Shown here piece after piece: positions 21,790 through 64,000 of a stretch of 64,000 bases of DNA. The notes under the pieces were generated by a model, which was not told where the DNA came from, made no database searches, and saw only the letters and a program-made list of their open reading frames with translations. The stretch lies in NCBI RefSeq assembly GCF_030144855.1, contig NC_082736.1, positions 7,192,001 to 7,256,000 on the forward strand, read 5' to 3'. Position 1 is the stretch's first letter; each line of letters begins with the position of its first letter. The translations under genes were made by a program, and so were the position numbers. This stretch comes from Hypanus sabinus. Lineage: Eukaryota.

Positions 21790-24515
21790 GGATGCAGAAT
21801 CAATTAGGGTAGCAAATCCAATACTTGAAGTGTTGTACCTCAATGCACAGCATATAAAAAATAAGGTGGATAATCTTATTGCCCTACTACAGATTGTCAT
21901 GTATAATGTGATCATCATTGAATCACAGCTGAAAAATATTTATAGTTGAGAGCTAAATGCCCAAGTTAGACATATCGGAGGGTCAGCAAGGTAGGCAATG
22001 AGGATAGCATGGCTCTGCTGGTAAAGAATGGTATCAAATCAGTAGGAAGATGAGCCATTGGATCGGAAGATGTTGAATCATTGTGAGTAGAGTTAAAAAA
22101 ATCTGCAAGTGTAAAAGGACATTGATGCAGTTATAAACAGGCCGCCAACAGTTGTTTGGATGTGGACCACAGATTACAACAGGAAATGGAAGAGGCATGT
22201 CAAAAGGCAATGTTATTGGAGATTTCATGGGAGATTTCAACAACCAGGTCAATTGGGAGAATCAGGTTGGAAATAGATCTCAAGAGAGTGAGTTTGTTGA
22301 ATGCCTAAGAGATGGCTTTTTAGAACAATTTGTCGTTGAGCCTACGAGGGAATCAGCTATACTGGATTGTGTGTTATTTAATGAACAGCAGGCAATTAGG
22401 GAACTTAAGGTAAAAGAACCCTTAGGAGGCAGTGATCACAGTATCATTGAGTTCAACTTGAGTCCAGGATAAGCGTATTCCAGAAACAAATAAATACTCA
22501 AATGGCAAAATAGTACAACTGTGGCTGAAAAGGAAGTCAAAGCTAATGTAAAACCAAAAGGGAGGGCATAAAACAAAGAAAAAAATAGTCAGAATACAAA
22601 GGATTGGGAAGCTTCTAACACCTTACAGAGAGCAACCTAAAGAGGATAAAGATTAAATATACAAGCAAACTAGCAAATATTATCAAAGTGGATCGTTGAA
22701 GCTTTTTCAAGTATGTAAAACATAAAGGAGAGATGAGACTGGATACTGGATTGCTAGAAAATCAGGACAGAGGAAGAATAATGGGGTGGGGGGGCGGGGG
22801 AAGGTGATGGCAGATGAACTAAATGAGTATTTGGCATCAGTGGAAGTTACTAGCCGTGTGCCAGATGTTGAAGGGAGTGAGGGGAGAGAAGGGAGTGCAG
22901 TTATTATTATAAGGGAAAGGTGCTCAAAAAGCTGAAAGACCTGAGGGTATATAAGTCACCTGGACCAGATGAACTGGACCCTAGGATTCTGACAGAGGTA
23001 GCAGTAGAGATTGTGGTGCCATTTGTAATGATCTTTCAAGACGTATTGGACTCTGGCATGGTGCAAGGGGACTGGAAAATTGCAAATGTCACTCCACTCT
23101 TTAAGAAAGGAGGAAGGCGGCAGAAAGGAAATTATAGACCAGTTAGTCTGACCACAGTGGTTGGGAAGATGCTGGAGTTAATTGTTAAAGATGAGGTTAT
23201 GGAGTATTGGAAACACAGGACAAGAAAGGACAAAGTCAGCATGGTTTCCTTAAGGGGAAGTCTTGCCTGATGAATCTGTTGGAATTCTTTGAAGAGATTA
23301 CACGCAGGATAAATAAAGGGGATGCAACGGATGTCATATATTTGGACTTTCAAAAGGCCTTTGACAAGGTGCCACACATGAGGCTGCTTACCAAGTTAAT
23401 AGCCCATGGTATTACAGGAAAGTTACTGACGTGGTTAGAACATTGGCTGATTGGTAGAAGGCAGCAAGTCAACAAGTGGGAATAAAAGGATCCTTTCTGG
23501 TTGGCTGCCAGTGAGTAGTGGTGTTCCGCAGGGGTCGGTGTTGGGACCACTTCTGTTTATGCTGTTTATCAATGATTTAAACGATGGAATAGATGGATTT
23601 GTTGCAAGTTTGCAGATGACAAGAAGGGCAGGTACTGTTCAGGAAACAGGTAGGCTCTAGAAGTACTTTGACAGATTAGGAGAATTGGCAAGACAATGGC
23701 AAAGGAAATACAATGTTGGAAAATACATGGTCGTGCACTTTGGTAGTAAAAATACACGTACAGACTATTTTCCAAATAGGGAGAAAATCCAAACATCTGA
23801 GATGCAAAGGGACCTGGAGTCTTCGTGCAAACCAGCCAAAAAATAACTTGCAGGTAGAGTCGGAGGTGAGGAATGCCAAAGCAATGTTAGCATTCACATC
23901 AAGCGGTTAGAATACAAGAGCAGGGATGTGATGCTGAGACTTTATAAGGCATTGGTGAGGCCTCACCTTGAGGATTGTGAAGAGTTATGGGCTCCTCATC
24001 CAAGAAAAGATGTACTGGCACTGGAAAGGGTTCAGAAGAAGTTCACAAGGGTGATTCTGGGAATGAAACGGTTATCATACGAGGAACATTTGATAGCTCT
24101 GGGTCTGGACTCGCTGGAATTTCGAAGGATGGGGGGGGGGGGGAATCTCATTTCAAATGCTGAAAGGCCTAGACTGAGTAGATGTGGAAAGAATGCTTCC
24201 TATGGTGGGGGAGTCTAGGACGAGAAGACACAATCTCAGGATAGAAGGCTGTCCATTTGAAACAGAAATGCAGAGAAATTCTTTAGTCAGAGGGTGGTGA
24301 ATTAATGCAATTTATATCCACAGGCTGCTGTGGAGGCTATGTCCTTGGGTCTACTTAAGGCAGAGCTTGATAGGCTCATGATTGGACACGACATCAAGGT
24401 TTGCAAGGAGAAGACCAGGGAGTGGGGATGCAAAGGGAAAAAAGGGTCAGCCATGATTGAATGGGAGTAGACTCGACGGGCCAAATAGTCTAATTCTGCT
24501 GCTATGCTGTACGGC
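21790..24515 (+). mobile_element. CR1 LINE ORF2 remnant (endonuclease, RT, 3' UTR); mirrored at ~61795-64000 on the minus strand
   Basis: LYLNAQHI, GDFN, GSDH, KSPGPDELDPRIL, YLDFQKAFDKVPH, SGVPQGSVLGPLLF. Confidence 0.9.
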
Positions 24516-24629
24516 CTTACTCAGTAAATCCAAGAACCATAACAGAAAGACGCACCTAACAGGGTGGCCAAATCACCAATGTGCAAACGACAATAAATTG
24601 TGTAAATACAAGAGAGAAAATAATAATAT

Positions 24630-27600
24630 TGTGGTGACCCTCTTCCCAACTCTCTCGAACCGGCTCACAAAGTGGCGAGCACCGGCATTGAGGCTGGTCC
24701 CAAAGAGGGCACCAAGCCTGCTTCACCAACAAGGGGAAAAGCCCGAGCACGGGATGGGACTGAGCGCGGGAACAGGAAGGCTTTAAAGCGAGGCCGTGCA
24801 GCTTGAATAAACATCTTTTGCAACTGCAGCTCACTGACTATGTGTCGTTATTTCAGCGCTGCGTGTAGCACACCGCTACAATTGGTGACCCCGACGGCCC
24901 AAACGATATTTGGACCGGAGATGAACGACTCCACATCTGTTCCTGCATTTTCATTAAAACTGCCAAGCTTCAGGACGCTGCGACCTCACCTATGGTTTCA
25001 GCAAGCAGAAGCCCAATTCCACATTCGGCAGATAAACTCGGATGTCACTTGTTACTACCACGTGGTGAGCTCCCTCGACCAGGAGACAGCCGCTCAGGTT
25101 GAGGAGTTCATACAGTCACCCCTGGAGGAGGACAAATACACAGAATTCAAAGCCCTGGTCATAAGGACTTTCGGACTCTCACGACGGGAGCAAGCTCTCC
25201 ACTTACTGCACTTGGATGGTTTGGGGGACAGGCCACCGTCAGCTTTGGTGAACGAGATGCTGTCCCTGGCCGGAGGTCACAAGCCCAGCCTCATGTTTGA
25301 GCAGGCGTTCCTGGAGCAGCTGCCCGAGGACATACGTCTGCTGCTGTCTAACGTGGATTTCAGTGACCCCCCCCCCGGAAGGTGGCGGCCCGGGCAGACG
25401 TGCTGTGGAAAGCCAAGGAGAGTGGGACGTCCGTCGCACAGATCACCAGGCCAGGCTCCCAGCAGCAGACCAGACCGGGCCTGGCCGCAGAGCCCAATAA
25501 CCCCAGGGGCAGGGGTGAGGAGACCAACGGACAATGGTGCTTTTACCACCAGCGGTGGGACGCAGAAGCCCATCGCTGTAGCTCGCCCTGCAAGTTCCCA
25601 GGGAATGCCACATAGAGACATGGTATCAGAATAGCCTCCTGCATGCCTGGGACAAGCATTTTGGTTGACACCGGAGCCGACATCAGCGTCTTACCTCCGA
25701 CGTGTTACGACACCCGCCACAGAGAATCGGGTCCCACCCTGAGGGCCGCGAACGGCAGCACAGTAAGGACCTACGGCAGCCATACGGTGCAGCTACAGTT
25801 CGGTTCCAGCCAGTTCATGTGGGACTTCACACTGGCCGCTGTAGCCCAACCGCTCCTGGGAGCAGATTTTTTGCGAGCTCACAGCCTACTGGTCAACCTG
25901 CCAAGGAAGAGACTGGTCCACGCTGAGACTTTTCAAACGTTCTCCCTGGGTGAAGCCCAGTTGCCGGCCCCACACCTAGACTCCATCACGCTGTCCGACA
26001 ACGACTTCACCAGAGTCCTGGCAGGTTTCCCATTGGTTCTGATGCTGAAGTTCATGGCAGCCATGCCCAGAGATGACATACAGCACCACATCCCGATACA
26101 AGGACCACCCCGTCCTCGAAGGCTTCCCCCAGACAAGCTCCGACTGGCAAAGGAGGAGTTCAAGAGGATGGAGGAATTGGGGATCATACAGCGGTCCGAC
26201 AGCCCATGGGCCTCCCCCCTGCACATGGTGCCCAAAGCAACAGGGGGCTGGAGACCATGCGGCAACTACCGCAGGCTGAACGAAGCTCCAACACCGGACC
26301 GCTACCCTGTGCCGCACATTCAGGACTTTGCAGCAAACCTGCACAGCACACGGATCTTTTCCGAGGTAGACCTCGTCCGGGGACACCATCAGATCCTGAT
26401 GCATCCGGACGACGTCCCCAAAATGGCACTCATCACCCCTTTCGGCCTTTTCGAATTCCTCCGCATGCCGTTCGGCCTAAAGAATGCCGCACAGACGTTT
26501 CAGCGGTTAATGGACGCGGTGGAACGCGACCTGGACTTCGCTTTCATCTATTTGGATGACATCCTCATAGCCAGCAGTAGTCGTCAGGAGCATCTGTCCC
26601 ACCTTCATCAACTCTACACCCGACCGAGTGATTACGGCCAAATGCCAGTTCGGATCGACACCATCGTCTTCCTGGGCCACAGGATTACTAAAGACGGGGC
26701 AACCCCTCTGCCCGCCAAGATAGACGCGGTCCGTCATTTCCCCCGAACCAACATAATCAAAGGCCTTCAGGAATTTGTGGGTATGGTAAATTTCTACCAC
26801 CGCTTCCTCCCTTCAGCAGCCTGAATCATGTGCCCCCTGTTCGCCCTGATGTCAGATAAGGGCAAGGACATAACCTGGGATGAGGAGTCCGCCACCGCTT
26901 TCATTAAAACTAAAGAAGCCTTGGCAAACGCCGCGATGCTAGTGCACCCCAGAACGGACGTCCCTACCGCCCCCACAGTGGACTCATCTAACACGATGGA
27001 GTCGATGGAGTGCTGGAACAACTCATCGAGGGTCGCAGGAAACCTCTGGCGTTTTTCCGCAAACACCTATGACCACCCGAGCTCAAATACAGTGCTTTCG
27101 ACCGGGAACTGTTGGCGTGATAACCTGGCAATCTGGCATTTCAGGTACTTCTTAGAAGGTAGGCCCTTTACCGCGTTCACGGACCACAACCCTCTTACGT
27201 TTGTGTTCACGAAAGCATCCGACCCATGGTCGTCCAACCAGCAGCAACATCTGTCCTACATCTCCGAATGCATGACGGGTGTCCAGCATGTCTCGGGAAA
27301 GGACAATGTCGTTGTGGACACCCTAACATCCAAGCCCTGTCCTGCGGGTAGACTATGAAGCGCTGGAGGAGGCACAGCAGGCAGACGAGAAGATCCCTAG
27401 TTACAGAACCGCAGTCTCCGGTTTGCAGCTCCAAGACCTCCCTGCAGGACCAGGTGAGAGGACCCTACTCTGTGACGTCGCCACTTGCCAACCCCGCCCC
27501 GTCGTCCTGGCAGCGGCACATTTTCATCTCCATCCACAACTTAGCTCACCCCTCCATCTGGTCAACCGTCTGGATGGTAGCCAACAGGTTCGTTTGGCAC

Positions 27601-28888
27601 GGACTCCGCCAGCCGGTCAGTGAATGGGCCAAAACGTGAATGCACTGCCAAACAGCCAAGGCTGAGCGGCACACCAAACCCCTGCCGCAGCAGTTCCCGG
27701 CGGTGTTTCAACCACATTCATGTGGATATCGTGGGCCCCTGCCAGTGTCGCGAGGAGCGTGGCACCTCCTGACTATCGTGGACCGGTTCACAAGATGGCC
27801 AGAGGCAGTCCCGCTCGCCGACACCACCTCCGAATCTTGCGACCGAGCACTGATTGCAACCCTGGGTATCTCACTTGGGTGTACCGGCCCACATTACCTC
27901 CGACAGAGGCGCCCAGTTCACCTCCAGCCTGTGCTCAGCTATGCCCAGCCTTTTGGGGACACAGCTGCAAAACACAACTGCCTACCACCCACAAGCGAAC
28001 GGACTAGTGGAGCGTTTCCACCTGAAGTCAGCTCTCATGGCCCGCTTCAAAGGGCCTAACTGGGTGGACAAGCTTCCCTGGTTCCTGCTCGGAATCCGCA
28101 CGGCGCCCAAAGAAGATCTGCATACCTCGTCGGCTGAGTTGGTGCACGGCGGACCCCTGGTCATCCCAGGAGAGTTCATACCAGCCCCAAGGGGGCAAGA
28201 GGAAGAACCCGCAGCAGTCCTGGGCAGACTACGCGAGGTTTGGTAACCTGGCCCACATACCCACTTCACAGCATGGGCAGAACCCGACCTGCGTTCCCAA
28301 CGACCTGCAAAACTGTAACTGTGTTTTTGTACGACAGGGCGGACATTGGGCACTGCTACAGCGGCCCTATGAGGGGCCGTTTACGGTGTTCAGAAACAAC
28401 GGGTCCACATTCGTGCTGGACGTTGTGGGGAGAGAGGAGGTTTTCACAGTGGACCAACTCCAACCGGCCCATGTGAACTTGGCGCAGCCGGTCAAGATTC
28501 AGGCACCGCGGCGCAGAGGCCGATCTCCCAAACAGAGTCCGACCCAGATTGAGGACATTGGGGGGGTGTATCGCCGGTTCTCTGGGGGGGGGGGGAAGGT
28601 TATGTGGCGACCCACTTCCCAGCGCACTCGAACTGGCTCACAAAGTTGCAAGTGCGGGCATTGAGGCCGGTCCCAAAAAGGGCACCAAGCCTGCTTCACC
28701 AGCAAGAGGAAGAGCCCGCACGCAGGACAGGTCTGTGAATATGTGCCCCCTACAGTATTCCCGCCCGGGGAGGGCAGGAACAGGAAGGCTTTTAAGCGAG
28801 GCCGCCAAGTTTGAATAAACCTCTTTTGCAACTGCAGCTTACCGATTACGTGTCTTTATTTCAGCGCTGCGTGTAGCACACCGCTACA
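24630..28888 (+). mobile_element. Ty3/Gypsy LTR retrotransposon, CsRn1-type, degenerate, both LTRs present
   Basis: LTRs 24630-24880 and 28603-28888 (TG...CA); TSD ATAT; PBS TGGTGACCCCGACG (tRNA-Trp) at 24883-24896; PPT ~28584-28599; Gag with CHCC motif; protease DTG, RT YLDD, RNase H and integrase fragments broken by frameshifts and stops. Confidence 0.95.
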
Positions 28889-30849
28889 ATATAGTCATAA
28901 TTAAGTAGAGAACATGACATGCAGAATACTTGGAAGTGAAGTGATAGATTGTGGGAAACAGTTCAGTGGTGAGTTAAGTGAAGTTAAATAGAGTTATCTC
29001 CATTGGTTCTGGTTTAAAGTGACACCAGTGAATCTCTTTTTCTGGTAAACAAATAGCCTGTAACTTTCCTATCAACTTGGATGCAATTTCATGTGGCAGA
29101 ACCAATGTGAGGAAGACCCAAAGTACGGTTTATTTAAACTCCGGGCTGAAATGGCAAAGTCAGATACAGGCCAAATCGAGGTGGTGGGTACCAGGCCCCA
29201 GATCGTATCAAAGCGACTGAACCCAATGTTTGGACGACGATTTAGACGCAGGGCCAGAATGAAAAGATCAGGTTGTTCTGCCCGAGGCCAGGGACAAAAG
29301 AAATTTAATGATAGGATCAGCTTGCATAAACAAAAAGCATAAACAATTTCAGAGTAGCCAATATCACTTTGCATGGGCAACGTCAACTCTTGCAAACTTG
29401 GCCGAATGTTTTAAGTGACAGACTCAACTGATGAGAGCTGGGTAGTGGGTATAGGACACAAGGACTTTGGTAAAGCTTTCAACAAGAGTCCCCATGGTGG
29501 GCTGATCCACAGCATGGAAGCACATCGCTCAAGAGAAATCTGATTGAGTATATTCAAAATGTACTCAATCAGAGAACACAGAAGGTAATGGTTGAGGGGT
29601 GTGATTCTGACTGGAGACCTGTGAAGAGTGGGCCCCACAAGAAATTCTGCTTTTTGTGAAATGATTCAGATAAAAACGAAGGAGGGCTGATTTGTTGGTC
29701 TGCAGAGACACAGAAATTGGTGCAGTTATGGACCGTGAAGAAAGTTTCCAAAGGATTCAGCAGAACATAGACCGGCTGGAAATGTGGGCAGAGAAATGGG
29801 AGATAAGTCGATGTACTCTGGGAAGTCAAATGTCAGAGGATTTCTTTGGAATTCCTCTCCCCATCAGAGTGGCTGGAATTACAGTTACGGCAGTGACATG
29901 CTCCACCTCAGGATGTGGGAGTCAATCAGTGTCCCCGATAACTTCACATGGGGGAAGTGCACCGAGGTGCAGCTCCTGACTGACCGTGTGAAGGAAATGA
30001 AGATGGAGATGAACAGACCGAGAGTTTCCAGGATGCTGAGACCAGAGGTTCAGTGAGTTGGTCACAACCGACGTCAGGCTGCAGATTGTTGGGTGACCAC
30101 CATGACGGAAAGGGGAAGAGACAGATAGAGGAATGTCTCCCTGTGGCCGTGACCCTCAGCAACAAGTACACTCCTTTGGATACCCCTGGGATGATGAACC
30201 AGAGACAGCAGCCAGCCAGGTCGGTGGTACTGAGACCCCAGACCGATGCTCCGCGGGAGGAAAGGTCAAGCAGAGCAGTGATGACTGCAGTCTCACAGTA
30301 CAGGGGATGTGCAGGAGATTCTGTGGCAGCCACAGAGATGACACGATGGTGTGTCGCCTCCTGGGTACTGGGGTCAGGTCCGTCTCAGACGTGCAGGATT
30401 TCCTAACGATAAACTTGCCAGTCAAGTCAGTGGTAAGGAAACCAAATGTCGGCATTCATTTAGAGAGGACTACAATACAAAAGCAAGGATGTAAGCATTG
30501 GTCCGATCACACTTGGAGTATTGTGAACTGTTTTGGGCCTCTTATCTAAAAAGCTACATGCTCGCATCGGAGAGGGTCCAGAGGACGTTCACAAAAACGA
30601 TCCTGGCAATAAAAGGGTTAATGCACGGGGATTGTTTGATAGCTCTGGGCCGGTTGTCTCTGGACTTTAGAAGAACGAGGGAATCTCATTGAAACAGATC
30701 AAATATTGAAAGGCCTAGAATAGAGTGGGGAGGGTGCTTCCGATAGTGTCTAGGAACACAGGGCACAGCCTCACAATACTAGGACAATACTGTTAGAACA
30801 AAGATAAGGAGCAATTTCCGTAGTAAAGAGCAGTGAATCTGTGTAGCCT

Positions 30850-31500
30850 ATGTCAGGATGTTGCTCATTGACTAGAGCTCAACGTTTAACACTATCATTC
30901 CCACAGTCCTGATCAATAAGCTACTGAACCTGGTCCCTCTGCAAATGGATCCTCGACTTCCCAACCGGAAAACCACAGTCTGTGCGGATTAGTGATAATC
31001 CACACAGATTGTGTGGAGGTATGGAGATGGGCTAACCCCTATTGACATCGATGGATCTGGGGTTGAGAGGGTAAACAGCTTTAAATTCCTCGGCATCAAC
31101 ATACCCGAGGATCTCGCATGGTCTCTACGTACCTGCTGTGTGCTGAAAAAGGCACAACAGCGCCTCGTTCACCTCCCAAATCCTAAGAACTTTCTACAGG
31201 GGCATAATTGGGAGCATCCCGACTGGCTGCATCACAGCCTGGTATGGGAACAGTACCTCCCTTAATTGCAGCACAGCCCAGCGCATCTGTTGTTGTCAAC
31301 TTCCCATGATTCAGGACATTGACAAAGACAGGCGTGAGAAAAGGGCCCGAGGGATCATTGTGGACCCCAGTCACCCCAAGCACAATCTATTCCAGCAGCA
31401 ACCATCTTTCTATATTAGCACGTCCTGCATTGAACTGCTGCTGCTAAATTAACAAATTTCCTGACACCTGCCGGTGATAATAAACCTGATTCTGGTCCTG
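30850..31500 (+). mobile_element. Rex1/Babar-like LINE 3' remnant (mirrored at ~55115-55810)
   Basis: VERVNSFKFLGINIPEDLAWS...KKAQQRL; tail aataaacctgattct. Confidence 0.7.
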
Positions 31501-33279
31501 ACTTTGAATTCATCCCCACAGACGGATGTGACCAATTCATTGGGTATATTTAATGTGGAGGTTCTCGATTGTGGGGGGAGGGGGGGGGTGGGCGGGATAA
31601 GAGTGTTTGAGAGGGTTAAGAGATCTGTCATGATCTCTTACTCCTGGCAGAATGGTGCAGCAGACTGGTTGGGCCAAATGGCCTAATTCTGCTGCTGTGT
31701 CTTATGGTCCGATGGTCTCGGAGCAGCTGCAGGACATTTCAAAGGGAAGGTTGAGCAGCCGGACATCGTGGTGGACGGTGGCTGTTGGTAATAGCAACGT
31801 AGGGATACGAGGGTTGTGTCTTGTGCAGTGAATTTAGAGAAATCAGACAGAAACTAAAAAGTAGTAAGCTCTGTATTACTCCCAGTGACACTTGTTAGTA
31901 GGGGGAGATATAGAGAGATACCAGTGATGAACGTGCGACTCAGGAGCTGGTGCAGGGGACAGAGTGCCAGTTTCATGGATCAATGGGACATCTTCTAGGG
32001 ATGGGTAGGCAGAAACTGTTCACTCCACAGGGTCTTTTAGGGAAGCAACAGTTTTCTCCGTACTAAAAGTGCACGGGATAGTTTTGATGTGACAGGGTGG
32101 ACATTGAAAGGGAATCTAAAGGGTGAGTTGCTGGAGGTGAATAAAATTACATGAGACATACAAAGGTTAGAGAAGCAGAGGCTGTTTCCAGTGGTGTGGC
32201 TGTCTAAAGCTAAAGGGAATAGTTGTAAGGTAAGAGGGTGTGTTTAAAGGTGATCTGAAGGGTAAATATTTGACACAGAGAACAGCTGGAATCCCAAATA
32301 AGCTGCCAGAGGAGGTGGTGGAGACAAAGACACACAAAGTCTCTGTTCCTGAACACTTCCCTGGAACCTGTCATTACTGTGTTCATCCTGCCCTGGTTTA
32401 ACTTCCCGATGCTGGGTCCATTGTTGTTTTCAATCTGTATAAACGATCTGGATGAGAATGTAGTAAACTGGATCAGAAAGTCTGTGGATGACAACAAGAT
32501 TAGGGGTATGATGAACAGTAAAGCCGGCTAACAAATCTGGATGTGGAATGCGGACCAGCTGGCAAAATGAAGTTGGTTACAATCTGGAACACACTTCCTG
32601 AGGGAGAGGTGCAGGCTGGTATTTAAGGAACATCTGGCTGAACATTTGAATCACCAGGACAGGGTAGGAGACAGACCAAGTGCTGAGTTAATGGAGACAG
32701 ATTCTCGATGGTCAGTATAGCCATGCAGAAACCACTGACTGTGAAAGTTCAGTGGGAAGCTGGAACACAGAACTTCAGGATGGATTTACCTAAAACACTC
32801 AGAACCCAATACGATGGATTTTTGTTGGACAAAGGTATTAATGCATTAGGGTTAATAGTGAATCAAACACCTCAAAAGGCTATCAAAATGCACCCATTCC
32901 CTGTTCACCAGTAACAGGACTTTAAAATGGGAATTTGATGAAGAACACTGGTTAGTATTAGGAGAGATGGCGGACAGCTTGGTCACAATGGAACGGTGCA
33001 AGTATTTTCTCAGAGGATAAGGGGTTCAGTGGAACAAGCTCACAGCTGAGAATGAAGGTAACAAACCCCACTGCAGTGGAGGACTGCTGTTGCCCTGGTT
33101 GAACCGCCCAGAATAGAGTCAGTGATTTATACAGAACTGAAACCGTCCCTTCGGTAAAACTCATCCACGCCGACCAAGTTGTCGACCTGAACTCGTCCCA
33201 TCCGCCTGCATTAGGCCCGTGTCCCTCTCAACCTTTCCTATCCATGTAACTGTGCAAATATGGTTTGAATATTGTACCT

Positions 33280-36339: not shown

Positions 36340-36369
36340 TTTGGAGAAATAGATTCAGCTTACGTCGCT

Positions 36370-52879: not shown

Positions 52880-53205
52880 CACTGTTCCCGGAAATGCCCC
52901 TCTGTACCCACTGAGTTCCAATGCTCGCAGTTTCTCAGTGGCACCACTGATTGACAGTTCTCTCTGACCCCGCCTCCCGTCACGTGACACCGTGTTGCGA
53001 TGACGCCGTGTGGCGATAATGACGAGATGAAGACGCCACAGAGGTCCCATCGTCACCGATGGTGGGCACGGGGTTGTGGTAAAGTGGAGTCGGTCTCCAC
53101 TTTGCGTTTCGGCTCCATTGTGGGAATCGGCCTCTCCTCTTCCTGCCCACGGAACAGTGAGTGTCTGTCAGCGCCTCACTGCACCGGCTCTCTGCCTCAG
53201 GTACA
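52880..53205 (+). promoter_or_regulatory. CpG-rich promoter-like element with candidate first exon (right arm)
   Basis: TTCCCGGAA (52885-52893), GC box, GTCACGTGAC (52979-52988), donor GTGAGT at 53157-53162. Confidence 0.55.
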
Positions 53206-56200
53206 ATATTTAAACCATATTTGCACAGTTACGTGGATAGGAAAGGTTGAGAGGGACACGGGCCTACTGCAGGCGGATGGGACGAGTTCAGGTCGACAAC
53301 TTGGTCGGCCTCGATGAGTTTTACCGAAGGGACGGTTTCAGTTCTGTATAAATCACTGACTCTATTCTGGGCGGTTCAACCAGGGCAGGATGTACGCAGT
53401 GAATGTCAGGTTCCTGGGAAGGTTTAATGAACATAGACTTTGCGGGTTTCTGCCCCCACACCTCCTCCGGCAGCTGATTTAGGAGAGCAGCTATTCTCTG
53501 TGTGAAGTATGTACCCTTCAGATCCCCTTTAAATCTGTCTTTAAACAGTTTTGTGCAATTCCAATGAGAGGCAGTTCTTTGGCTGATAAGGAAAGTAGAA
53601 CACACAACCCTGTCTACCTGTGATGCCACATACAGGGAACTGTGTAACAGTATTAGAGATACATGCATAGGCAGTTCAGTGAGCAAGGCCTGGAGGGATA
53701 TGAAACTAATGCAGGAAAGTGGGATTAGTATAGCTGTGCATGATGGGGAGCATAAATGTGATGGGCCAGAGGGTCTGTTTCTATCCTGGCCAACCCTGGC
53801 AACAGCAGTCCTCCACTGCTGTGGGGTTTGTTACCTTCATACTCAGCTGTGAGCTTGTTCCACTGAACCCCTTATCCTCTGAGAAGATATTTACACCCTT
53901 CCATTGTGACCTCCATCTCTCCTGCTATTAACGAGTGTTCTTCACCGAATTCCAATTTAAAAGTCCTGTTACTGGTGAACAGGGAATTGGTGCATTTTGA
54001 TAGCCTTTTGAGGTGTTTGATTCACTATTAACCCTAATTCATTAATTCTGAGTATTTTAGGTAAGTCCATCCTGAAGTTCTGTGTTCCAGGTTCCCACTG
54101 AACTTTCACAGTCAGTGGTTTCTGCATGTCTATACTGACCATCGAGAATCTGTCTCCATTAACTCAGCACTTGGTCTGTCTCCTACCCTGACCTAGTGAT
54201 TCAAATGTTCAGCCAGATGTTCCTTAAATACCAGCCTGCACCTCTCCCTCAGGCAGTGTGTTCCAGATTGTAACCAACTTCATTTTGCAAGCTGGTTCAC
54301 TTCCCACTTCAAGATTTGCTAGCCGCCTTTGCTGTCCATCATACCCCTAATCTTGTTGTCATCTGCAAACTTGCTGATCCAGTTTACCACATTCTCATCC
54401 AGATCGTTTATACAGATGCAAAACAACAACGGACCCAGCACCGGGACGTTAAACCAGGGCAGGATGAACACGGTAATGACAGGTTCCTGGGAAGTGTTCA
54501 TCAACAGAGACTTTGTTTTTTTTTCCTCCACCACCTCATCTGGCAGCTCATTCGGGATACCAGCTATTCTCTGTGTCAAATATTTACCCTTCAGATCCTC
54601 TTTAAACTACCCCCCTGTCACCTTACAACTATAGCTTTAGACAGCCACACCACGGGAAACAGTCTCTGACTCTCTAACTTTTGTATGCCTCACGTAATTT
54701 TATCCACCTCCATCAACTCACCCTTTAGATTCCCTTTCAACCTCCACCCTGTCACGTCTTAGTTTCTGTCTGATTTCTCTAAATTCACTGCACAGGACAC
54801 AACCCTCGTATCCCTACATTGCTATTACCAACATGCACCGTCCACCAGGATGTCCGGCTGCTCAACCTTCCCTTTGAAATGTCCTGCAGCTGCTCCGAGA
54901 CCATCGGACCATAAGACACAGCAGCAGAATTAGGCCATTTGGCCCATCCAGTCTGCTGCCCCATTCTGCCAGGTGTAAGAGATCATGACCGATCTCTTAA
55001 CCCTCTGAAACACTCTTATCCCATCCCCCCCCGCCCCCACAATCGAGAACCTCCACATTCAATGTACCCAATGAATCGGTCACATCCGTCTGAGGAGATG
55101 AATTCAGAGTCAGGACCAGAATCAGGTTTATTACCACCGGCAGGTGTCAGGAAATTTGTTAATTTAGCAGCAGCAGTTCAATGCAGGACATGCTAATATA
55201 TAAAGATGGTTGCTGCTGGAATAGATTGTGCTTGGGGTGACTTGGGTCCACAATGATCCTTCAGGCCCTTTTCTCACACCTGTCTTTGAAACTGTCCTGA
55301 ATGATGGGAAGCTCACAACTACAGATGCGCTGGGCTGTCCGCAACACACTCTGCAGAGTCCTGCAATTGAGGGAAGTACAGTTCCCATACTAGGCAGTGA
55401 TGCAGCCAGTCGGGATGCTCCCAGTTGTGCCCCTGTAGAAAGTTCTTAGGATTTGGGGGCCCAGAGCAAACTTCCTCAGTTGTCTGCGGTGTACGAGGTG
55501 CTGTTGTGCCTTTTCCACCACTCAGCAGGTACGTATAGACCACGTGAGATCCTCGGATATGTTGATGTCGAGGAATTTAAAGCTGTTTACCTTCTCAACC
55601 CCAGATCCATTGATGTCCATAGGGGTTAGCCCATCTCCATGAACAATCTGTGTGGATTATCACTAATCCGCACAGATTGTATTCTCCCAGTTAGGAAGTC
55701 GAGGATCCATTTGCAGAGGGACCAGGTTCCATTGCTTATTGATCAGGACTGTGGAAATGAAGGTGTTAAATGCTGATCTCTTGTCACTGAACAACTTCCT
55801 GACATAGGCAGCACAGATTCACTAGCTTTTTCCAAGGAATTTGCTCCTTACCTTTGTTCTAACCACTGACCACTGACTCGACTGGCAAGTTTATCTTTAG
55901 GAAATCCTTCACATCTGAGACGAACCTGACCCCAGTAGCCAGAAGACAACAGACCATCGTGTCATCTCTGTTGCTGCCACAGAATCTCCTGCACATCCCC
56001 TGTACTGTGAGTCTGCTGTCATCACTGCTCTGCTTGACCATTCCTCCCGCGGAGCATCGGTCTGGGGTCTCAGTACCACCGACCTGGCGTGCTGCTGTCT
56101 CTGGTTCGTCATCCCAGGGGTATCCAAAGGAGTCTACTTGTTGCTGAGGGTCACGGCCACAGGCAGACATTACTCTGTCTGTCTCTTCCCCTTTCCGTCG

Positions 56201-57418
56201 TGATGGTCACACAACAGTCTGCATCCTGCCCTCAAGTGTGACCAACTCACTGAACCTCTGGTCTCAGCATCCTGGAAACTCTCGGTCTGTCCATCTCCAT
56301 CTTCATTTCCTTCACACGGTCAGTCAGGAGCTGCACCTCGGTGCACTTCCCCCATGTGAAGTTATCGCGGACACTGAGTGACTCCCACATCCTGAGGTGG
56401 AGCATGTCAGTGCCGTAACTGTAATTCCAGCCACTCTGATGGGGAGAGGAATTCCAAAGAAATCCTCTGACATTTGACTTCCCAGAGTACACCGACTTAT
56501 CTCTCATTTCTCTGCCCACATTTCCAGCCGGTCTATGTTCTGCTGAATCCTTTGGCAACTTTCCTCACGATCCATAACTGCACCAATTTCTGTGTCTCTG
56601 CAGACCAACAAATCAGCCCTCCTTCGTTTTCATCCAAATCATTTCACAAAAAGCAGAATTTCTTGTGGGGCCCACTCTTCACAGGTCTCCAGTCAGAATC
56701 ACACCCCTCAACCATTACCTTCTGTGTTCTCTGATTGAGTACATTTTGAATATACTCAATCAGATTTCTCTTGAGCGATGTGCTTCCATGCTGTGGATCA
56801 GCCCACCATGGGGACTCTTGTTGAAAACTTTACCAAAGTCCTCGTGTCCTATACCCACTACCCAGCTCTCATCAGTCGAGTCTGTCACTTAAAACATTCG
56901 GCCAAGTTTGCAAGAGTTGACGTTGCCCATGCAAAGTGATATTGGCTACTCTGAAATTGTTTATGCTTTTTGTTTATGCAAGCTGATCCTATCATTAAAT
57001 TTCTTTTGTCCCTGGCCTCGGGCAGAACAACCTGATCTTTTCATTCTGGCCCTGCGTCTAAATCGTCGTCCAAACATTGGGTTCAGTCGCTTTGATATGA
57101 TCTGGGGCCTGATACCCACCACCTCGATTTGGCCTGTATCTGACTTTGCCATTTCAGCCTGGAGTTTAAACCAACCGTACTTTGTGTCTTCCTCACATTG
57201 GTTCTGCCACATGAAATTGCATCCAAGTTGATAGGAAAGTTACAGGCTATTTGTTTACCAGAAAAAGAGATTCACTGGTGTCACTTTAAACCAGAACCAA
57301 TGGAGATAACTCTATTTAACTTCACTTAACTCACCACTGAACTGTTTCCCACAATCTATCACTTCACTTCCAAGTATTCTGCATGTCATGTTCTCTATTT
57401 ATTTAATTATGACTATAT

Positions 57419-60400
57419 TGTAGCGGTGTGCTACACGCAGCGCTGAAATAAAGACACGTAATCGGTAAGCTGCAGTTGCAAAAGAGGTTTATTCAAACTT
57501 GGCGGCCTCGCTTAAAAGCCTTCCTGATCCTGCCCTCCCCGAGCGGGAATACTGTAGGGGGCGCATATTCACAGACCTGTCCTGCGTGCGGGCTCTTCCT
57601 CTTGCTGGTGAAGCAGGCTTGGTGCCCTTTTTGGGACCGGCCTCAATGCCCGCGCTCACAACTTTGTGAGCCAGTTCGAGTGCGCTGGGAAGTGGGTCGC
57701 CACATAAACGCCCCCCAGAGAACCGGCGATACACCCCACAATGTCCTCAGTCTGTTTGGATGGTCTGCCTCTGCGCCGTGGTGCCTGAATCTCGACCGGC
57801 TGCGCCAAGTTCACATGGGCCAGTTGGAGTTGGTCCACCGTGAAAACCTCCTCTCTCCCCACAACGTCCAGCACGAATGTGGACCCGTTGTTTCTGAACA
57901 CCGTAAACGGCCCCTCATAGGGCCGCTGTAGCGGTGCCCAGTGTCCACCCTGTCGTACAAAAACACAGTTACAGTTTTGCAGGTCGTTGGGAACGCAGGT
58001 CGGGTTCTGCCCATGCTGTGAAGTGGGTATGTGGGCCAGGTTACCAAGCCTCGCGTAGTCTGCCCAGGACTGCTGTGGGTTCTTCCTCTTGCCCCCTTGG
58101 GGCTGGTATGAACTCTCCTGGGATGACCAGGGGTCCGCCGTGCACCAACTCAGCCGACGAGGTATGCAGATCTTCTTTGGGCACCGTGCAGATTCCGAGC
58201 AGGAACCAGGGAAGCTCGTCCACCCAGTTAGGCCCTTTGAGGCGGGCCATGAGAGCTGATTTCAGATGGAAACGCTCCACTAGTCCGTTCGCTTGTGGGT
58301 GGTAGGCAGTTGTGTTTTGCAGCTGTGTCCCCAAAAGGCTGGGCATAGCTGAGCACAGGCTGGAGGTGAACTGGGCGCCTCTGTTGGAGGTAATGTGGGC
58401 CGGTACACCCAAGTGAGATACCCAGGTTGCAATCAGTGCTCGGGCGCAAGATTCGGAGGTGGTGTCGGCGAGCGGGACTGCCTCTGGCCATCTTGTGAAC
58501 CTGTCCACGATAGTCTGGAGGTGCCACGCTCCTCGCGACACTGGCAGGGGCCCACGATATCCACATGAATGTGGTTGAAACACCGCCGGGTGGGGTGGAA
58601 CTGCTGCGGCAGGGGTTTGGTGTGCCACTCAGTCTTGGCTGTTTGGCAGTGCATTCACGTTTTGGCCCATTCACTGACCGGCTGGCGGAGTCCGTGCCAA
58701 ATGAACCTGTTGGCAACCATCCAGACGGTTGACCAGATGGAGGGGTGAGCTAAGTTGTGGATGGAGATGAAAATGTGCCACTGCCAGGACGAAGGGGCGG
58801 GGTTGGCCAGTGGCGACGTCACAGAGTAGGGTCCTCTCACCTGGGCCTGCAGGGAGGTCTTGGAGCTGCAAACCAGAGACTGCGGTTCTGTAACTAGGGA
58901 TCTTCTCGTCTGCCTGCTGTGCCTCCTCCAGCGCTTCATAGTCTACCCGCAGGACAGGGCTTGGATGTTAGGGCGTCTGCAACGACATTGTCCTTTCCCG
59001 AGACATGCTGGACACCCGTCATGCATTCGGAGATGTAGGACAGATGTTGCTGCTGGTGGGACGACCATCGGTCGGATGCTTTTGTGAACACAAACGTAAG
59101 AGGGTTGTGGTCCGTGAACGCGGTAAAGGGCCTCCCTTCTAAGAAGTACCTGAAATGCCAGATTGCCAGGTTATCACGCCAACAGTTCCCGGTCGAAAGC
59201 ACTGTATTTGAGCTTGGGTGGTCATAGGTGTTTGCGGAAAAACGCCAGGGGTTTCCTGCGACCCTCGATGAGTTGTTCCAGCACTCCATCGACTCCATCG
59301 TGTTAGATGCGCCACTGTGAGGGCGGTAGGGACGTCCATTCTGGGGTGCACTAGCATCGCGGCGTTTGCCAAGGCTTCTTTGGTTTTAATGAAAGCGGCG
59401 GCGGACTCCTCATCCCAGGTCATGTCCTTGCCCTTATCTGACATCAGGGCGAACAGGGGGCACATGATTCAGGCTGCTGAAGGGAGGAAGCGGTGGTAGA
59501 AATTTAACATACCCACAAATTCCCGAAGGCCTTTGATTATGTTGGTTTGGGGGAAATGACGGACCGCGTCTATCTTGGCGGGCAGAGGGGTTGCCCCGTC
59601 TTTAGTAATCCTGTGGCCCAGGAAGACGATGGTCGATCCGAACTGGCATTTGGCCGTAATCACTCGGTCGGGTGTAGAGTTGATGAAGGTGGGACAGATG
59701 CTCCTGACGACTACTGCTGGCTATGAGGATGTCATCCAAATAGATGAAAGCGAAGTCCAGGTCGCGTTCCACCGCATCCATTAACCGCTGAAACGTCTGT
59801 GCGGCATTCTTTAGGCCGAACGGCATGCGGAGGAATTCGAAAAGGCTGAAAGGGGTGATGAGTGCCATTTTGGGGACGTCGTCCGGATGCATGAGGATCT
59901 GATGGTGTCCCCGGACGAGGTCTACCTCGGAAAAGATCCGTGTGCCATGCAGGTTTGCTGCAAAGTCCTGAATGTGCGGCACAGGGTAGCGGTCCGGTGT
60001 TGTAGCTTCGTTCAGCCTGCGGTAGTTGCCGCATGGTCTCCAGCCCCCTGTTGCTTTGGGCACCATGTGCAGGGGGGAGGCCCATGGGCTGTCGGACCGC
60101 TGTATGATCCCCAATTCCTCCATCCTCTTGAACTCCTCCTTTGCCAGTCGGAGCTTGTCTGGGGGAAGCCTTCGAGGACGGGGTGGTCCTTGTATCGGGA
60201 TGTGGTGCTGTATGCCGTGTCTGGGCATGGCTGCCGTGAACTTCGGCACCAGAACCGATGGGAAACCTGCCAGGACTCTGGTGAAGTCATTGTCAGACAG
60301 CGTGATGGAGTCGATGTGTGGGGCCGGCAACTGGGCTTCACCCAGGGAGAACGTTTGAAAGGTCTCAGCGTGGACCAGTCTCTTCCTTGGCAGGTTGACC

Positions 60401-61681
60401 AGTAGGCTGTGAGCTCGCAAAAAATCTGCTCCCAGGAGCGGTTGGGCTACGGTGGCCAGTGTGAAGTCCCACATGAACTGGCTGGAACCGAACTGTAGCT
60501 GCACCGTATGGCTGCCGTAGGTCCTTACTGTGCTGCCGTTCGCGGCCCTCAGGGTGGGACCCGATTCTCTGTGGCGGGTGTCGTAACACGTCGGAGATAA
60601 GACGCTGATGTTGGCTCCGGTGACAACCAAAATGCAGCGTCCCGACTGCTTGTCCCAGACATGCAGGAGGCTATTCTGATACCATGTCTCTATGTGGCAT
60701 TCCCTGGGAACTTGCAGGGCGGGCTACAGCGACGGGCTTCTGCGCCCCACCGCTGGTGGTAGAAGCACCATTGTCCGTTGGTCTCCTCACCCCTGCCTCT
60801 GGGGTTAGTGGGCTCTGCGGCCAGGCCCGGTCTGGTCTGCTGCTGGGAGCCTGGCCTGGTGATCTGTGCGACGGACGTCCCACTCTCCTTGGCTTTCCAC
60901 AGCACGTCTGCCTAGGCCGCCACCTTCCGGGGGGGTGGGGGGGGTCACTGAAATCCACGTTAGACAGCAGCAGACGTATGTCCTCGGGCAGCTGCTCCAG
61001 GAACGCCTGCTCAAACATGAGGCTGGGCTTGAGACCTCCGGCCAGGGACAGCATCTCGTTCACCAAAGCTGACGGTGGCCTGTCCCCCAAACCATCCAGG
61101 TGCAGTAAGTGGAGAGCTTGCTCCCGTCGTGAGAGTCCGAAAGTCCTTATGACCAGGGCTTTGAATTCTGTGTATTTGTCCTCCTCCAGGGGCGACTGTA
61201 TGAACTCCTCAACCTGAGCGGCTGTCTCCTGGTCGAGGGAGCTCACCACGTGGTAGTAACAAGTGGCATCCGAGTTTATCTGCCGAATGTGGAATTGGGC
61301 TTCTGCTTGCTGAAACCATAGGTGAGGTCGCAGCGTCCTGAAGCTTGGCAGTTTTAATGAAAATGCAGGAACAGATGTGGCGTCGTTCATCTCCGGTCCA
61401 AATATCGTTTGGGCTGTCGGGGTCACCAATTGTAGCGGTGTGCTACACGCAGCGCTGAAATAACGACACATAGTCAGTGAGCTGCAGTTGCAAAAGATGT
61501 TTATTCAAGCTGCACGGCCTCGCTTTAAAGCCTTCCGGTTCCCGCGCTCAGTCCCATCCCGTGCTCGGGCTTTTCCCCTTGTTGGTGAAGCAGGCTTGGT
61601 GCCCTCTTTGGGACCAGCCTCAATGCCGGTGCTCGCCACTTTGTGAGCCGGTTCGAGAGAGCTGGGAAGTGGGTCACCACA
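57419..61681 (-). mobile_element. Second copy of the Gypsy element (duplicated with the arm)
   Basis: LTRs 61431-61681 and 57419-57704; same ATAT TSD and flanks; protease motif mutated to VTG. Confidence 0.95.
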
Positions 61682-61794
61682 ATATTATTATTTTCTCTCT
61701 TGTATTTACACAATTTATTGTCGTTTGCACATTGGTGATTTGGCCACCCTGTTGGGTGCGTCTTTCTGTTGTGGTTCTTGGATTTACTGAGTAA

Positions 61795-64000
61795 GGCCGT
61801 ACAGCATAGCAGCAGAATTAGGATATTTGGCCCGTCGAGTCTACTCCCATTCAATCATGGCTGACCCTTTTTTCCCTTTGCATCCCCACTCCCTGGTCTT
61901 GTCCTTGCAAACCTTGATGCCGTGTCCAATCATGAGCCTATCAAGCTCTGCCTTAAGTAGACCCAAGGACATAGCCTCCACAGCAGCCTGTGGATATAAA
62001 TTGCATTAATTCACCACCCTCTGACTAAAGAATCTCTCTGCATTTCTGTTTCAAATGGACAACCTTCTATCCTGAGATTGTGTCTTCTCGTCCTAGACTC
62101 CCCCACCATAGGAAGCATCCTTTCCACATGTACTCAGTCTAGGCCTTTCAGCATTTGAAATGAGATTCCCCCCCACCATCCTTCGACATTCCAGCGAGTC
62201 CAGACCCAGAGCTATCAAATGTTCCTCGTATGATAACCGTTTCATTCCCAGAATCACCCTTGTGAACTTCTTCTGAACCCTTTGCAGTGCCAGTACATCT
62301 TTTCTTGGATGAGGAGCCCATAACGCTTCACAATCCTCAAGGTGAGGCCTCACCAATGCCTTATAAAGTCTCAGCATCACATCCCTGCTCTTGTATTCTA
62401 ACCGCTTGATGTGAATGCTAACATTGCTTTGGCATTCCTCACCTCCGACTGTACCTGCAAGTTATTTTTTGGCTGGTTTGCACGAAGACTCCAGGTCCCT
62501 TTGCATCTCAGATGTTTGGATTTTCTCCCTATTTGGAAAATAGTCTGTACGTGTATTTTTACTACCAAAGTGCACGACCATGTATTTTCCAACATTGTAT
62601 TTCCTTTGCCATTGTCTTGCCAATTCTCCTAATCTGTCAAAGTACTTCTCGAGCCTACCTGTTTCCTGAACAGTACCTGCCCTTATTGTCATCTGCAAAC
62701 TTGCAACAAATCCATCTATTCCATCGTTTAAATCATTGATAAACAGCATAAACAGAAGTGGTCCCAACACCGACTCCTGCGGAACACCACTACTCACTGG
62801 CAGCCAACCAGAAAGGATCCTTTTATTCCCACTTGTTGACTTGCTGCCTTCTACCAATCAGCCAATGTTCCAACCACGCCAGTAACTTTCCTGTAATACC
62901 ATGGGCTATTAACTTGGTAAGCAGCCTCATGTGTGGCACCTTGTCAAAGGCCTTTTGAAAGTCCAAATATATGACATCCATTGCATCCCCTTTATTTATC
63001 CTGCGTGTAATCTCAAAGCATTCCAACAGGTTCATCATTCAAGATTTCCCCTGAAGGAATCCATGCTGACTTTGTCCTTTCTTGTCCTGTCTTTCCAATA
63101 CTCCATATCCTCATCTTTAACAATTAACTCCAGCATCTTCCCAACCACTGAAGTCAGACTAACTGGTCTATAATTTCCTTTCTGCCGCCTTCCTCCTTTC
63201 TTAAAGAGCGGAGTGACATTTGCAATTTTCCAGTCCCCTTGCACCACGCCAGAGTCCAATACGTCTTGAAAGATCATTACTAATGGCACCACAATCTCTA
63301 CCGCTACCTCTGTCAGAATCCTAGGGTCCAGTTCATCTGGTCCAGGTGACTGATATACCCTCAGGACTTTCAGCTTTTTGAGCACCTTTCCCTTATAATA
63401 ATAACTGAACTCCCTTCTCTCCCCTCACTCCCTTCAACATCTGGCACATGGCTAGTAACTTCCACTGATGCCAAATACTCATTTAGTTCATCTGCTATCA
63501 CCTTCCCCCGCCCCCCCACCACCCCATTATTCTTCCTCTGGCCTGATTTTCTAGCAATCCAGTATCCAGTCTCATCTCTCCTTTATGTTTGACATACTTG
63601 AAAAAGCTTCAACGATTCACTTTGATAATATTTGCTAGTTTGCTTGCATATTTAATCTTTATCCTCTTTAGGTTGCTCTCTGTAAGGTGTTAGAAGCTTC
63701 CCAATCCTCTGTATTCTATTTTTTTCTTTGTTTTATGCCCTCCCTTTTGGTTTTACATTAGCTTTGACTTCCTTTTCAGCCACAGTTGTACTATTTTGCC
63801 ATTTGAGTATTTATTTGTTTCTGGAATACGCTTATCCTGGACTCAAGTTGATCTCAATGATACTGTGATCACTGCCTCCTAAGGGTTCTTTTACCTTAAG
63901 TTCCCTAATTGCCTGCTGTTCATTAAATAACACACAATCCAGTATAGCTGATTCCCTCGTAGGCTCAACGACAAATTGTTCTAAAAAGCCATCTCTTAGG
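61795..64000 (-). mobile_element. Mirror copy of the CR1 LINE in the right arm
   Basis: Same ORF fragments on the minus strand. Confidence 0.88.

What the first reader, a model, noticed from the sequence alone, without database searches (positions are those of the whole stretch)
22304..64000. At least 11.7-kb inverted duplication bracketing an ~18-kb spacer that holds H2A, H2B and tRNA-Asp
Seen: 22304-34150 is the reverse complement of 52265-64000, sharing nested TE junctions (CR1, Gypsy with the same TSD, Rex1), and the match continues to the last base of the window. Established: long inverted repeats are substrates for non-allelic recombination and arm-to-arm gene conversion. Inference: the H2A/H2B/tRNA spacer may be an invertible cassette with polymorphic orientation, and the palindrome may extend far enough to duplicate the H4-H3-H1 block downstream.
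Basis: partly seen in the sequence, partly recalled or inferred. Interest (0 to 1): 0.7.

Follow-up and report, generated by a model that had tools for sequence, protein, structure and literature searches.

The report
Two-layered inverted duplication flanking stingray histone genes
Two mirror-image copies of about 12 kb of decayed mobile-element DNA really do flank the H2A, H2B and tRNA-Asp genes of the Atlantic stingray; they have an old inner layer and a younger outer layer and have drifted apart since, so this is an ordinary old genome duplication rather than a demonstrated flip-flop switch.

Summary
Window 22304-34150 is the reverse complement of 64000-52265, and the match is cut off by the window edge. 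The 18.1-kb spacer holds canonical H2A, H2B and tRNA-Asp genes.

The genome is Hypanus sabinus, assembly GCA_030144855.1.

The arms carry no genes. They are decayed mobile elements: a LINE, a broken Gypsy with identical target-site duplication in both arms, and short high-copy elements.

The arms have two age layers.
- **Outer layer:** at least 7.7 kb, K2P distance 0.022.
- **Inner layer:** 4.1 kb, K2P distance 0.10.
- **Step between them:** sharp, at 30041-30068, in low-copy DNA.

This pattern fits an old inverted duplication whose outer part was later over-written or extended by one long homology-directed copying event. Since then the arms have diverged neutrally, with no sign of ongoing conversion; the longest identical tract is 221 bp.

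An assembly artefact is very unlikely, although short public contigs could not bridge the arm-spacer junctions.

The arm divergence argues against an active flip-flop.

The scan has noted similar inverted duplications elsewhere in this genome (for example s1-207110, s1-187899, s1-203393). Interest is low to moderate.

The parts
22304..30066 (+). Arm A, young outer layer. It contains a LINE (endonuclease about 22224-22449, RT about 23100-23482) and a nested decayed Gypsy. The left limit is set only by the window edge of its partner.
   Evidence: 7,729 aligned sites, 2.2% substitutions, K2P 0.0224, transversions 0.78%. Domains.
24630..28890 (+). Gypsy LTR retrotransposon in arm A. LTRs lie at about 24630-24882 and 28603-28890, and the target-site duplication is ATAT. 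The coding region is broken into several ORFs. The same insertion lies in arm B at 61681-57417.
   Evidence: LTR-to-LTR K2P is 0.16 within an element, against 0.012-0.021 between the arms, so the insertion predates both layers.
30041..30068 (.). Step between the young and old layers: the end point of the later copying event. The partner position in arm B is about 56262-56235.
   Evidence: maximum-likelihood change point at 30067, 2-lnL interval 30041-30068, gain of 132 lnL units over one rate; depth here is low-copy, so the step is not at an element boundary.
30067..34150 (+). Arm A, old inner layer, a mix of low-copy DNA and high-copy short elements. Arm-A-only pieces lie at 30438-30789 (352 bp, a high-copy element) and 31858-32085 (228 bp).
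   Evidence: K2P 0.101, transversions 4.5%. Copy-number classes.
33091..33419 (+). 329-bp island of low divergence (4.0%) inside the old layer, bounded by indels. It is a candidate short conversion tract. Its partner is 53387-53059.
   Evidence: 13 differences in 329 sites against a 10% background, P = 3.5e-5.
34151..52264 (.). Spacer of 18.1 kb. It holds H2A (36370-36753, minus), H2B (37737-38111, minus) and tRNA-Asp (47276-47349, minus), plus LINE fragments such as an RT piece at 51347-51772.
52265..56262 (-). Arm B, old inner layer. Arm-B-only pieces lie at 53388-53801 (414 bp) and 52495-52581 (87 bp). The high-copy element that is cut at 34150 in arm A runs on here past 52265 into the spacer.
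   Evidence: In one search the loose ends at 34150 read CTATCAGGTCACCTCTCATCC..., which is what arm B carries below 52265.
56263..64000 (-). Arm B, young outer layer, including the same Gypsy at 57417-61681. It is cut off by the window end.

Best explanation
This is a genuine, old inverted segmental duplication in the histone locus of Hypanus sabinus, built in two steps. First, a stretch of non-coding, mobile-element-rich DNA was copied in inverted orientation about 18 kb away, on the other side of the H2B-H2A-tRNA-Asp segment. That is the old layer, K2P about 0.10. Its inner edge in arm A cuts a high-copy element that is continuous in arm B, so arm B is ancestral at that edge. Much later, at K2P about 0.022, one arm was over-written or extended from the other by a single long homology-directed copying event. 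This could have been long-tract conversion, or break-induced or template-switch replication primed in the old repeat. It ended or began at 30041-30068 and ran outward for at least 7.7 kb, past the window edge. Since then the arms have diverged freely and neutrally. The arms carry no genes and no evident function. The repeat is a possible substrate for inversion of the histone/tRNA spacer, but probably a poor and currently inactive one. Shown here: the anatomy, the two layers, the sharp step, neutrality, and the relative ages. Inferred: the copying mechanism, its direction, and the absolute ages, which are of the order of 10^7 years or more given slow elasmobranch rates.
For: Collinear inverted alignment over 11.8 kb. 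Two rates with a sharp step: K2P 0.0224 against 0.101, change point 30067 with interval 30041-30068 and a gain of 132 lnL units. The contrast holds for transversions alone (0.78% against 4.5%) and for non-CpG sites (1.6% against 8.1%), so it is not a CpG effect. The step lies in low-copy DNA, not at an element boundary (depth). Gypsy LTR-to-LTR K2P of 0.16 exceeds both layers, and the target-site duplication is identical in both arms, so the element predates the duplication. The substitution spectrum looks biological: a transition-to-transversion ratio of 1.8, and 29% of outer-layer substitutions are CpG transitions. Differences are even over codon positions in the Gypsy ORFs, which indicates neutrality. 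There is no unusually long identical tract: the maximum is 221 bp, and the simulated probability of a tract at least that long is 0.63. Element-sized arm-specific indels show independent later history of the arms. The element truncated at 34150 continues in arm B and in the consensus of 82-109 loose contig ends per run. Independent samples carry arm-A-specific structure: contigs of runs X3 and X4 span the 228-bp arm-A-only piece at about 97% identity (records 11 and 20).
Against: No read or contig listed bridges either arm-spacer junction. The region 33800-34200 is an element of about 10^5 summed depth, and short-read contigs break there. Arm B is supported in independent data only by a 31-mer share of 0.26-0.31, and part of that may come from high-copy elements. 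The outer end of the young layer is unseen, so over-writing of an existing repeat cannot be told apart from outward extension of a shorter one. Differences in the young layer are over-dispersed (variance-to-mean ratio 2.15, P = 0.0002), so its history may not be a single clean event.
Confidence: 0.72

Rival explanations
1. Active invertible cassette. Non-allelic homologous recombination between the arms repeatedly flips the H2A/H2B/tRNA-Asp spacer, so both orientations segregate in the population.
For: The arms are long (at least 11.8 kb) and inverted, and the outer 7.7 kb is about 97.8% identical. The young layer and the 329-bp island prove past arm-to-arm exchange. Human polymorphic inversions are known with 7-kb inverted repeats of only 94% mean identity (PMC3961182).
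Against: Systems that flip repeatedly keep their repeats almost identical through continual homogenisation, as in the yeast flip/flop region (PMC9731477). The human 94% case contains a 782-bp tract of 99.9% identity. Here there is one difference every 42 bp, the longest identical tract is 221 bp and no longer than chance gives, and divergence is neutral and even. No orientation data exist.
Confidence: 0.08
2. Assembly artefact. The second arm would be a mis-joined haplotype or a chimeric palindromic read, not a real second copy in this arrangement.
For: No listed public contig bridges the junctions at 34150 or 52265. The source reads of the assembly were not available.
Against: There is no gap in 64 kb. 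The arms differ by 2.2% in the outer layer and about 10% in the inner layer, with element-sized indels of 352, 228, 414 and 87 bp. That is far above the one shark nucleotide-diversity figure to hand, 0.002 in the epaulette shark (PMC10587355). Chimeric palindromic reads give near-identical arms and no 18-kb unique spacer. Retained haplotigs give direct rather than inverted copies (general knowledge). The substitution spectrum is evolutionary. Arm-A-specific pieces occur in independent samples.
Confidence: 0.04
3. A single duplication of one age, with the inner 4 kb simply mutating four to five times faster than the outer 8 kb.
For: The inner layer is rich in short high-copy elements and has many indels, which can inflate apparent divergence.
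Against: The step is abrupt, within about 30 bp, and lies in low-copy DNA. The contrast is as strong for transversions and non-CpG sites. GC content and CpG content are similar on both sides. The outer layer is not under constraint.
Confidence: 0.04
4. The arms are only the inner part of a much larger palindrome, or of a multi-copy alternating array, that also duplicates the H1-H3-H4 block. This is compatible with the best explanation rather than exclusive of it.
For: The match is cut by the window edge, and a LINE runs across the 22304 limit. Unchecked earlier notes report more inverted duplications just downstream and an approximately 11-kb inverted duplication bracketing an H4-H3-H1 trio about 129 kb further on.
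Against: The exact H1 protein of this window is on record at one place only. Both points are weak.
Confidence: 0.12

Closest known systems
[quoted passage not shown] 2014, PMC3961182)
   Same: Inverted repeats of several kb flank a unique segment of 5-200 kb that contains genes. Mean identity of the repeats can be as low as 94%.
   Different: In those cases both orientations were genotyped, and the break points fall in tracts of near-perfect identity (782 bp at 99.9%). Here no orientation data exist, and the longest identical tract is 221 bp.
Yeast chromosome XIV flip/flop region (Salzberg et al. 2022, PMC9731477)
   Same: A roughly 24-kb gene-bearing segment lies between inverted repeats of several kb.
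   Different: The yeast repeats are almost identical because they are continually homogenised, and they consist of functional genes. The stingray arms are 2.2-10% diverged, show no recent homogenisation, and consist of decayed mobile elements.
Sex-chromosome palindromes with arm-to-arm gene conversion (human Y; recalled from memory, Rozen et al. 2003)
   Same: Large inverted repeats around a unique spacer, with sequence exchange between the arms.
   Different: Y palindrome arms are above 99.9% identical and carry testis genes kept intact by conversion. Here there is a single past exchange, there are no genes in the arms, and the arms have drifted freely since.
Inverted-repeat-primed replicative rearrangements (DUP-TRP/INV-DUP at PLP1 and MECP2; PMC4352052, title and abstract seen)
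   Same: A pre-existing inverted repeat serves as the homology for a template switch that copies neighbouring DNA in inverted orientation. This would give an old core with a younger outer layer.
   Different: Those are recent pathogenic events with copy-number gain. Here the mechanism is only inferred from the divergence layers.
Inverted duplications in the chicken histone gene cluster (recalled from memory, D'Andrea et al. 1985, Mol Cell Biol; not found in the paper library)
   Same: A dispersed vertebrate histone cluster whose organisation includes inverted duplicated blocks.
   Different: In the chicken the duplicated blocks contain the histone genes themselves. Here the seen arms hold only mobile-element debris, and the histone genes sit in the spacer and the flank.

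Membership tests
Inverted segmental duplication (low-copy inverted repeat) | Two collinear copies of at least 1 kb and at least 90% identity in opposite orientation on one chromosome | tested here: met
   11.8 kb collinear. The outer 8.1 kb is 96.7% identical counting gaps; the inner part is 84-96%.
Inverted segmental duplication (low-copy inverted repeat) | The copies share one origin and are not independent insertions of the same elements | tested here: met
   Same nested junctions and the same ATAT target-site duplication. Low-copy stretches align too. Orthologous LTRs differ by 1-2% against 16% within an element.
Inverted segmental duplication (low-copy inverted repeat) | Present in the organism and not only in the assembly | tested here: inconclusive
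   Internal evidence is strong. Independent contigs confirm arm-A-specific pieces. No listed contig bridges the junctions, and arm B is supported only by word share.
Palindrome maintained by ongoing arm-to-arm gene conversion | Arms near-identical (above 99%), with long identical tracts | tested here: not met
   2.2% and 10% divergence. The longest identical tract is 221 bp, as chance gives.
Palindrome maintained by ongoing arm-to-arm gene conversion | Evidence of at least one past exchange between the arms | tested here: met
   A sharp divergence step at 30041-30068 and a 329-bp low-divergence island.
Inversion polymorphism mediated by inverted repeats (invertible cassette) | Both orientations of the spacer observed among haplotypes or individuals | not testable with these tools
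Only short Logan contigs of up to about 0.9 kb lay on the stretch.
Inversion polymorphism mediated by inverted repeats (invertible cassette) | A tract of near-perfect identity of several hundred bp in the repeats, to serve as the crossover site | tested here: not met
   The longest tract in the seen part of the arms is 221 bp. The unseen part beyond base 64000 could differ.

The most novel reading that the evidence does not exclude
The seen arms could be the inner part of a larger, multi-layered palindromic architecture of the stingray histone locus. Its young layer would reach and duplicate the H1-H3-H4 block. By occasional long copying events and inversions it would drive concerted evolution and reshuffling of histone gene sub-clusters.
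Probability: 0.1. Interest if true: 0.5.

Novelty: new member of a known kind. Interest (0 to 1): 0.27.

Why it matters
The duplication gives a clean, datable example of how a dispersed vertebrate histone cluster is remodelled: an inverted duplication of mobile-element debris, followed by one long homology-directed copying event. It also marks a place where inversion of the H2A/H2B/tRNA segment is mechanically possible. Together with the other inverted duplications the scan has noted in this genome, it may point to a recurrent repair or replication signature in this species. Taken alone it is a neutral structural feature with no shown effect on any gene.

Tried and rejected
- **Reaching DNA beyond base 64000 through the look-up of encoding contigs.** The H1 look-up named the assembly but returned no DNA because the file is too large. 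The Gypsy gag ORFs of both arms are not on record. The outward extent of the palindrome therefore stays unknown.
- **Laying reads across the left arm-spacer junction.** Only Logan contigs were available, so there was no depth-based copy count. Contigs break in the very high-copy element at 33800-34200, so none of the listed pieces bridges 34150. At 80% likeness the tables were dominated by element copies, and most rows were cut from the output. Arm-B-type contigs, which would show as skips of 352 or 228 bp, could be neither shown nor excluded.
- **Word shares of the two junction stretches.** The shares are alike in the same runs (X3 0.35 and 0.31; X4 0.33 and 0.26). Runs of several other organisms reach about 0.22-0.25, so high-copy element words may make up much of the share. 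I count this as weak support only.
- **Pfam scans of 30 ORFs outside the Gypsy.** They gave only LINE endonuclease and RT fragments. No host gene was found in the arms. The names CR1 and Rex1 could not be checked.
- **CpG-island scan.** It found only the histone genes and the Gypsy interior, with no orphan promoter in the seen arms.
- **CpG decay as the cause of the divergence step.** Considered and rejected.
- **Selection on the outer layer.** Considered and rejected.
- **Independent insertions of the same elements.** Considered and rejected.
- **Paper searches for the chicken histone inverted duplications.** Nothing was found. That comparison rests on memory.
Full report
**1. The observation**

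A self-comparison of the window finds one dominant inverted match. Positions 22304-30437 pair with 64000-55866 over 8.17 kb at 96.7% identity counting gaps. Collinear inverted blocks of 84-96% identity continue inward down to 34150/52265. A global alignment of the two arms confirms collinearity over 11.8 kb, and similarity falls to background (46%) just beyond 34150/52265.

The match begins at the last base of the window, so the true outer end is unseen. The window contains no N.

An exact-protein look-up of the H1 gene places the window on a 39.8-Mb chromosome of assembly GCA_030144855.1. A paper names that assembly as the Atlantic stingray, Hypanus sabinus (PMC12946260).

**2. Gene content**

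The window holds one set of five replication-dependent histone genes:
- H1 at 2129-2782 (+)
- H3 at 3665-4075 (-)
- H4 at 4756-5067 (-)
- H2A at 36370-36753 (-)
- H2B at 37737-38111 (-)

Each is followed by the histone 3' stem-loop. Two reach the Rfam gathering score, and all five are found by the stem-loop pattern, with 6 matches against 0.04 expected. tRNA-Asp(GTC) lies at 47276-47349 (-).

H1-H3-H4 lie 17-20 kb to the left of arm A.

**3. What the arms are made of**

No host gene was found in the arms.
- **LINE:** endonuclease and RT fragments run on the + strand from before 22304 to about 23.5 kb.
- **Gypsy:** an LTR retrotransposon with gag (DUF7041), protease, RT, RNase H and integrase lies at 24630-28890. 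Its coding region is broken into several ORFs, differently in the two arms. It has TG...CA LTRs, a primer-binding site, a polypurine tract and an ATAT target-site duplication, and all of these are the same in arm B.
- **Older split element:** the Gypsy splits an older element whose two halves are contiguous in another copy at 18980-19201.
- **Inner 4 kb:** this part mixes low-copy DNA with short elements of very high copy number. Summed contig depth reaches up to 10^5 in four public runs.

**4. Two age layers**

Divergence is not uniform along the arms.

| Region | Substitutions | Non-CpG | Transversions |
|---|---|---|---|
| 22304 to about 30000 | 2.2% | 1.6% | 0.78% |
| About 30000 to 34150 | 9.3% | 8.1% | 4.5% |

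A two-rate model places the change at 30067, with a 2-lnL interval of 30041-30068. It gains 132 lnL units over a single rate. K2P distances are 0.0224 for the outer layer and 0.101 for the inner.

The step lies 370 bp before the nearest large indel. It also lies in DNA of low copy number in the public runs, so it is not an element boundary or an alignment effect. GC and CpG content are similar on both sides.

Inside the old layer, a 329-bp island (33091-33419) bounded by indels has only 4.0% divergence against a 10% background (P = 3.5e-5). This is the size of an ordinary conversion tract.

The two LTRs of the Gypsy differ by K2P 0.16 within an element, but by only 0.012-0.021 between the arms. 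The order of events is therefore: Gypsy insertion, then the old layer, then the young layer.

**5. State of the young layer**

Its 183 differences are spaced 42 bp apart on average. The longest identical tract is 221 bp, which is what random placement gives (simulated mean 242 bp, P = 0.63).

Differences are somewhat clumped (variance-to-mean ratio 2.15, P = 0.0002). The clumps are 50-100 bp long.

Differences fall evenly on the three codon positions of the Gypsy ORFs. The transition-to-transversion ratio is 1.8, and 29% of all substitutions are CpG transitions.

This is neutral drift since one event, with no sign of later homogenisation.

**6. The inner boundary**

Homology ends at 34150 in arm A, in the middle of a very high-copy element. 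In arm B the same element runs on past 52265. In all four runs the loose ends of 82-109 contigs at 34150 continue with the element's consensus, which matches arm B.

Arm B is therefore ancestral at this edge. Arm A's edge is a rearrangement break point: either the original duplication junction or a later deletion.

Arm-specific pieces of 352 and 228 bp (arm A only) and of 414 and 87 bp (arm B only) record separate later histories. The 352-bp piece is a high-copy element.

**7. Real or artefact?**

- **Sequence evidence.** There is no gap in the window. The arms differ by 2-10% and by element-sized indels. The one shark nucleotide-diversity figure to hand is about 0.002, in the epaulette shark (PMC10587355). 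The spacer is 18 kb of unique DNA, and the substitution spectrum is evolutionary. None of this fits a retained haplotype or a chimeric palindromic read.
- **Independent data.** Runs of a coded organism A, with four samples in one study, hold both junction stretches at similar 31-mer shares. Laid on 29400-35399, they give low-copy contigs 96.7-98.6% like arm A. These include contigs that span the whole arm-A-only 228-bp piece (X3 record 11, X4 record 20) and the left edge of the arm-A-only 352-bp piece (X4 record 19).
- **What those contigs imply.** They differ from the window by 1.4-3.3%, so organism A is probably a close relative rather than the sequenced animal. If so, the old layer predates their split. 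This is inference.
- **Limits.** No listed contig bridges 34150, because short-read contigs break in the high-copy element. Arm B has only the word share in its favour. The tables were heavily truncated.

I put the artefact reading at about 4%.

**8. Mechanism**

The simplest history has two steps.

First came an inverted duplication of mobile-element-rich DNA across the H2B-H2A-tRNA segment. Later, a break in one arm was repaired from the other by a single long copying event whose inner end is the step at 30041-30068.

Ordinary conversion tracts are a few hundred bp and rarely above 1 kb (PMC3961182). A tract of at least 7.7 kb therefore points to long-tract conversion, or to break-induced or template-switch replication primed in the old repeat, as described for inverted-repeat-mediated rearrangements (PMC4352052). 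Whether it over-wrote an existing old outer part or extended a shorter repeat outward cannot be told without the outer end.

On absolute age, a shark germline rate of 7e-10 per site per generation (PMC10587355) would put even the young layer at the order of 10^7 years. This is rough and rests on a rate from another species.

**9.

- **Invertible cassette.** Inversion is mechanically possible. However, repeatedly flipping systems keep near-identical repeats (PMC9731477), and even the human case with 94% mean identity has a 782-bp tract at 99.9% (PMC3961182). The seen part of these arms has nothing of the kind. I rate an active orientation polymorphism at about 8%. No data on orientation could be obtained.
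- **Extension to H4-H3-H1.** This is untestable here. The exact H1 protein is on record at only one place. Earlier notes list no histone genes in the roughly 40 kb after the window. They do list an H2B/H2A pair about 53.5 kb beyond, further inverted duplications just downstream, and an approximately 11-kb inverted duplication around an H4-H3-H1 trio about 129 kb beyond. These notes are unchecked leads.

**10. Verdict**

This is a real inverted segmental duplication with two age layers, made of neutral mobile-element debris and flanking histone and tRNA genes.

It is a new example of a well-known kind of structure. The clean divergence step is a neat record of one long arm-to-arm copying event. 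No function or present activity is shown.

Noticed in passing
window 36324-38111 (-): H2B and H2A lie head-to-tail on the same strand: H2B, its stem-loop, about 0.9 kb, H2A, its stem-loop. They do not form the usual divergent pair with a shared promoter. Earlier notes on this genome mention orphan H2A promoters in such units.
   Followed up: no
window 33800-34400: A short element shows extreme copy number, with summed contig depth of 5e4-2e5 in runs of two coded organisms. It is cut at 34150 in arm A and continuous in arm B. The family was not identified.
   Followed up: partly
window 30438-30789: A 352-bp piece present only in arm A is itself a high-copy element. It is most simply an insertion after the old duplication. 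A second arm-A-only piece of 228 bp (31858-32085) is low-copy.
   Followed up: partly
window 5413-5751 and 11314-11649: A 339-bp inverted repeat pair at 90% identity lies just downstream of H4 and brackets about 5.6 kb. These are probably two copies of one element.
   Followed up: no
window 8094-8232 and 9830-9968, also 37284-37401, 43995-44080, 40016-40101: A dispersed short repeat of about 80-140 bp occurs in both orientations. Rfam at gathering score reported no hammerhead.
   Followed up: no
window 23244-23292, 26034-26077, 28520-28600: Small clumps of 8-15 differences per 50-100 bp lie inside the otherwise 2% diverged young layer. They may be unconverted remnants of older divergence, or multi-base mutation events.
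   Followed up: partly
window 29400-35399 in runs X1, X3, X4 (organism A) and X5 (organism B): Low-copy contigs from two coded organisms are 1.4-4% different from the window. At many sites where the arms differ they carry arm B's letter. This suggests close relatives whose data could polarise the arm differences.
   Followed up: partly
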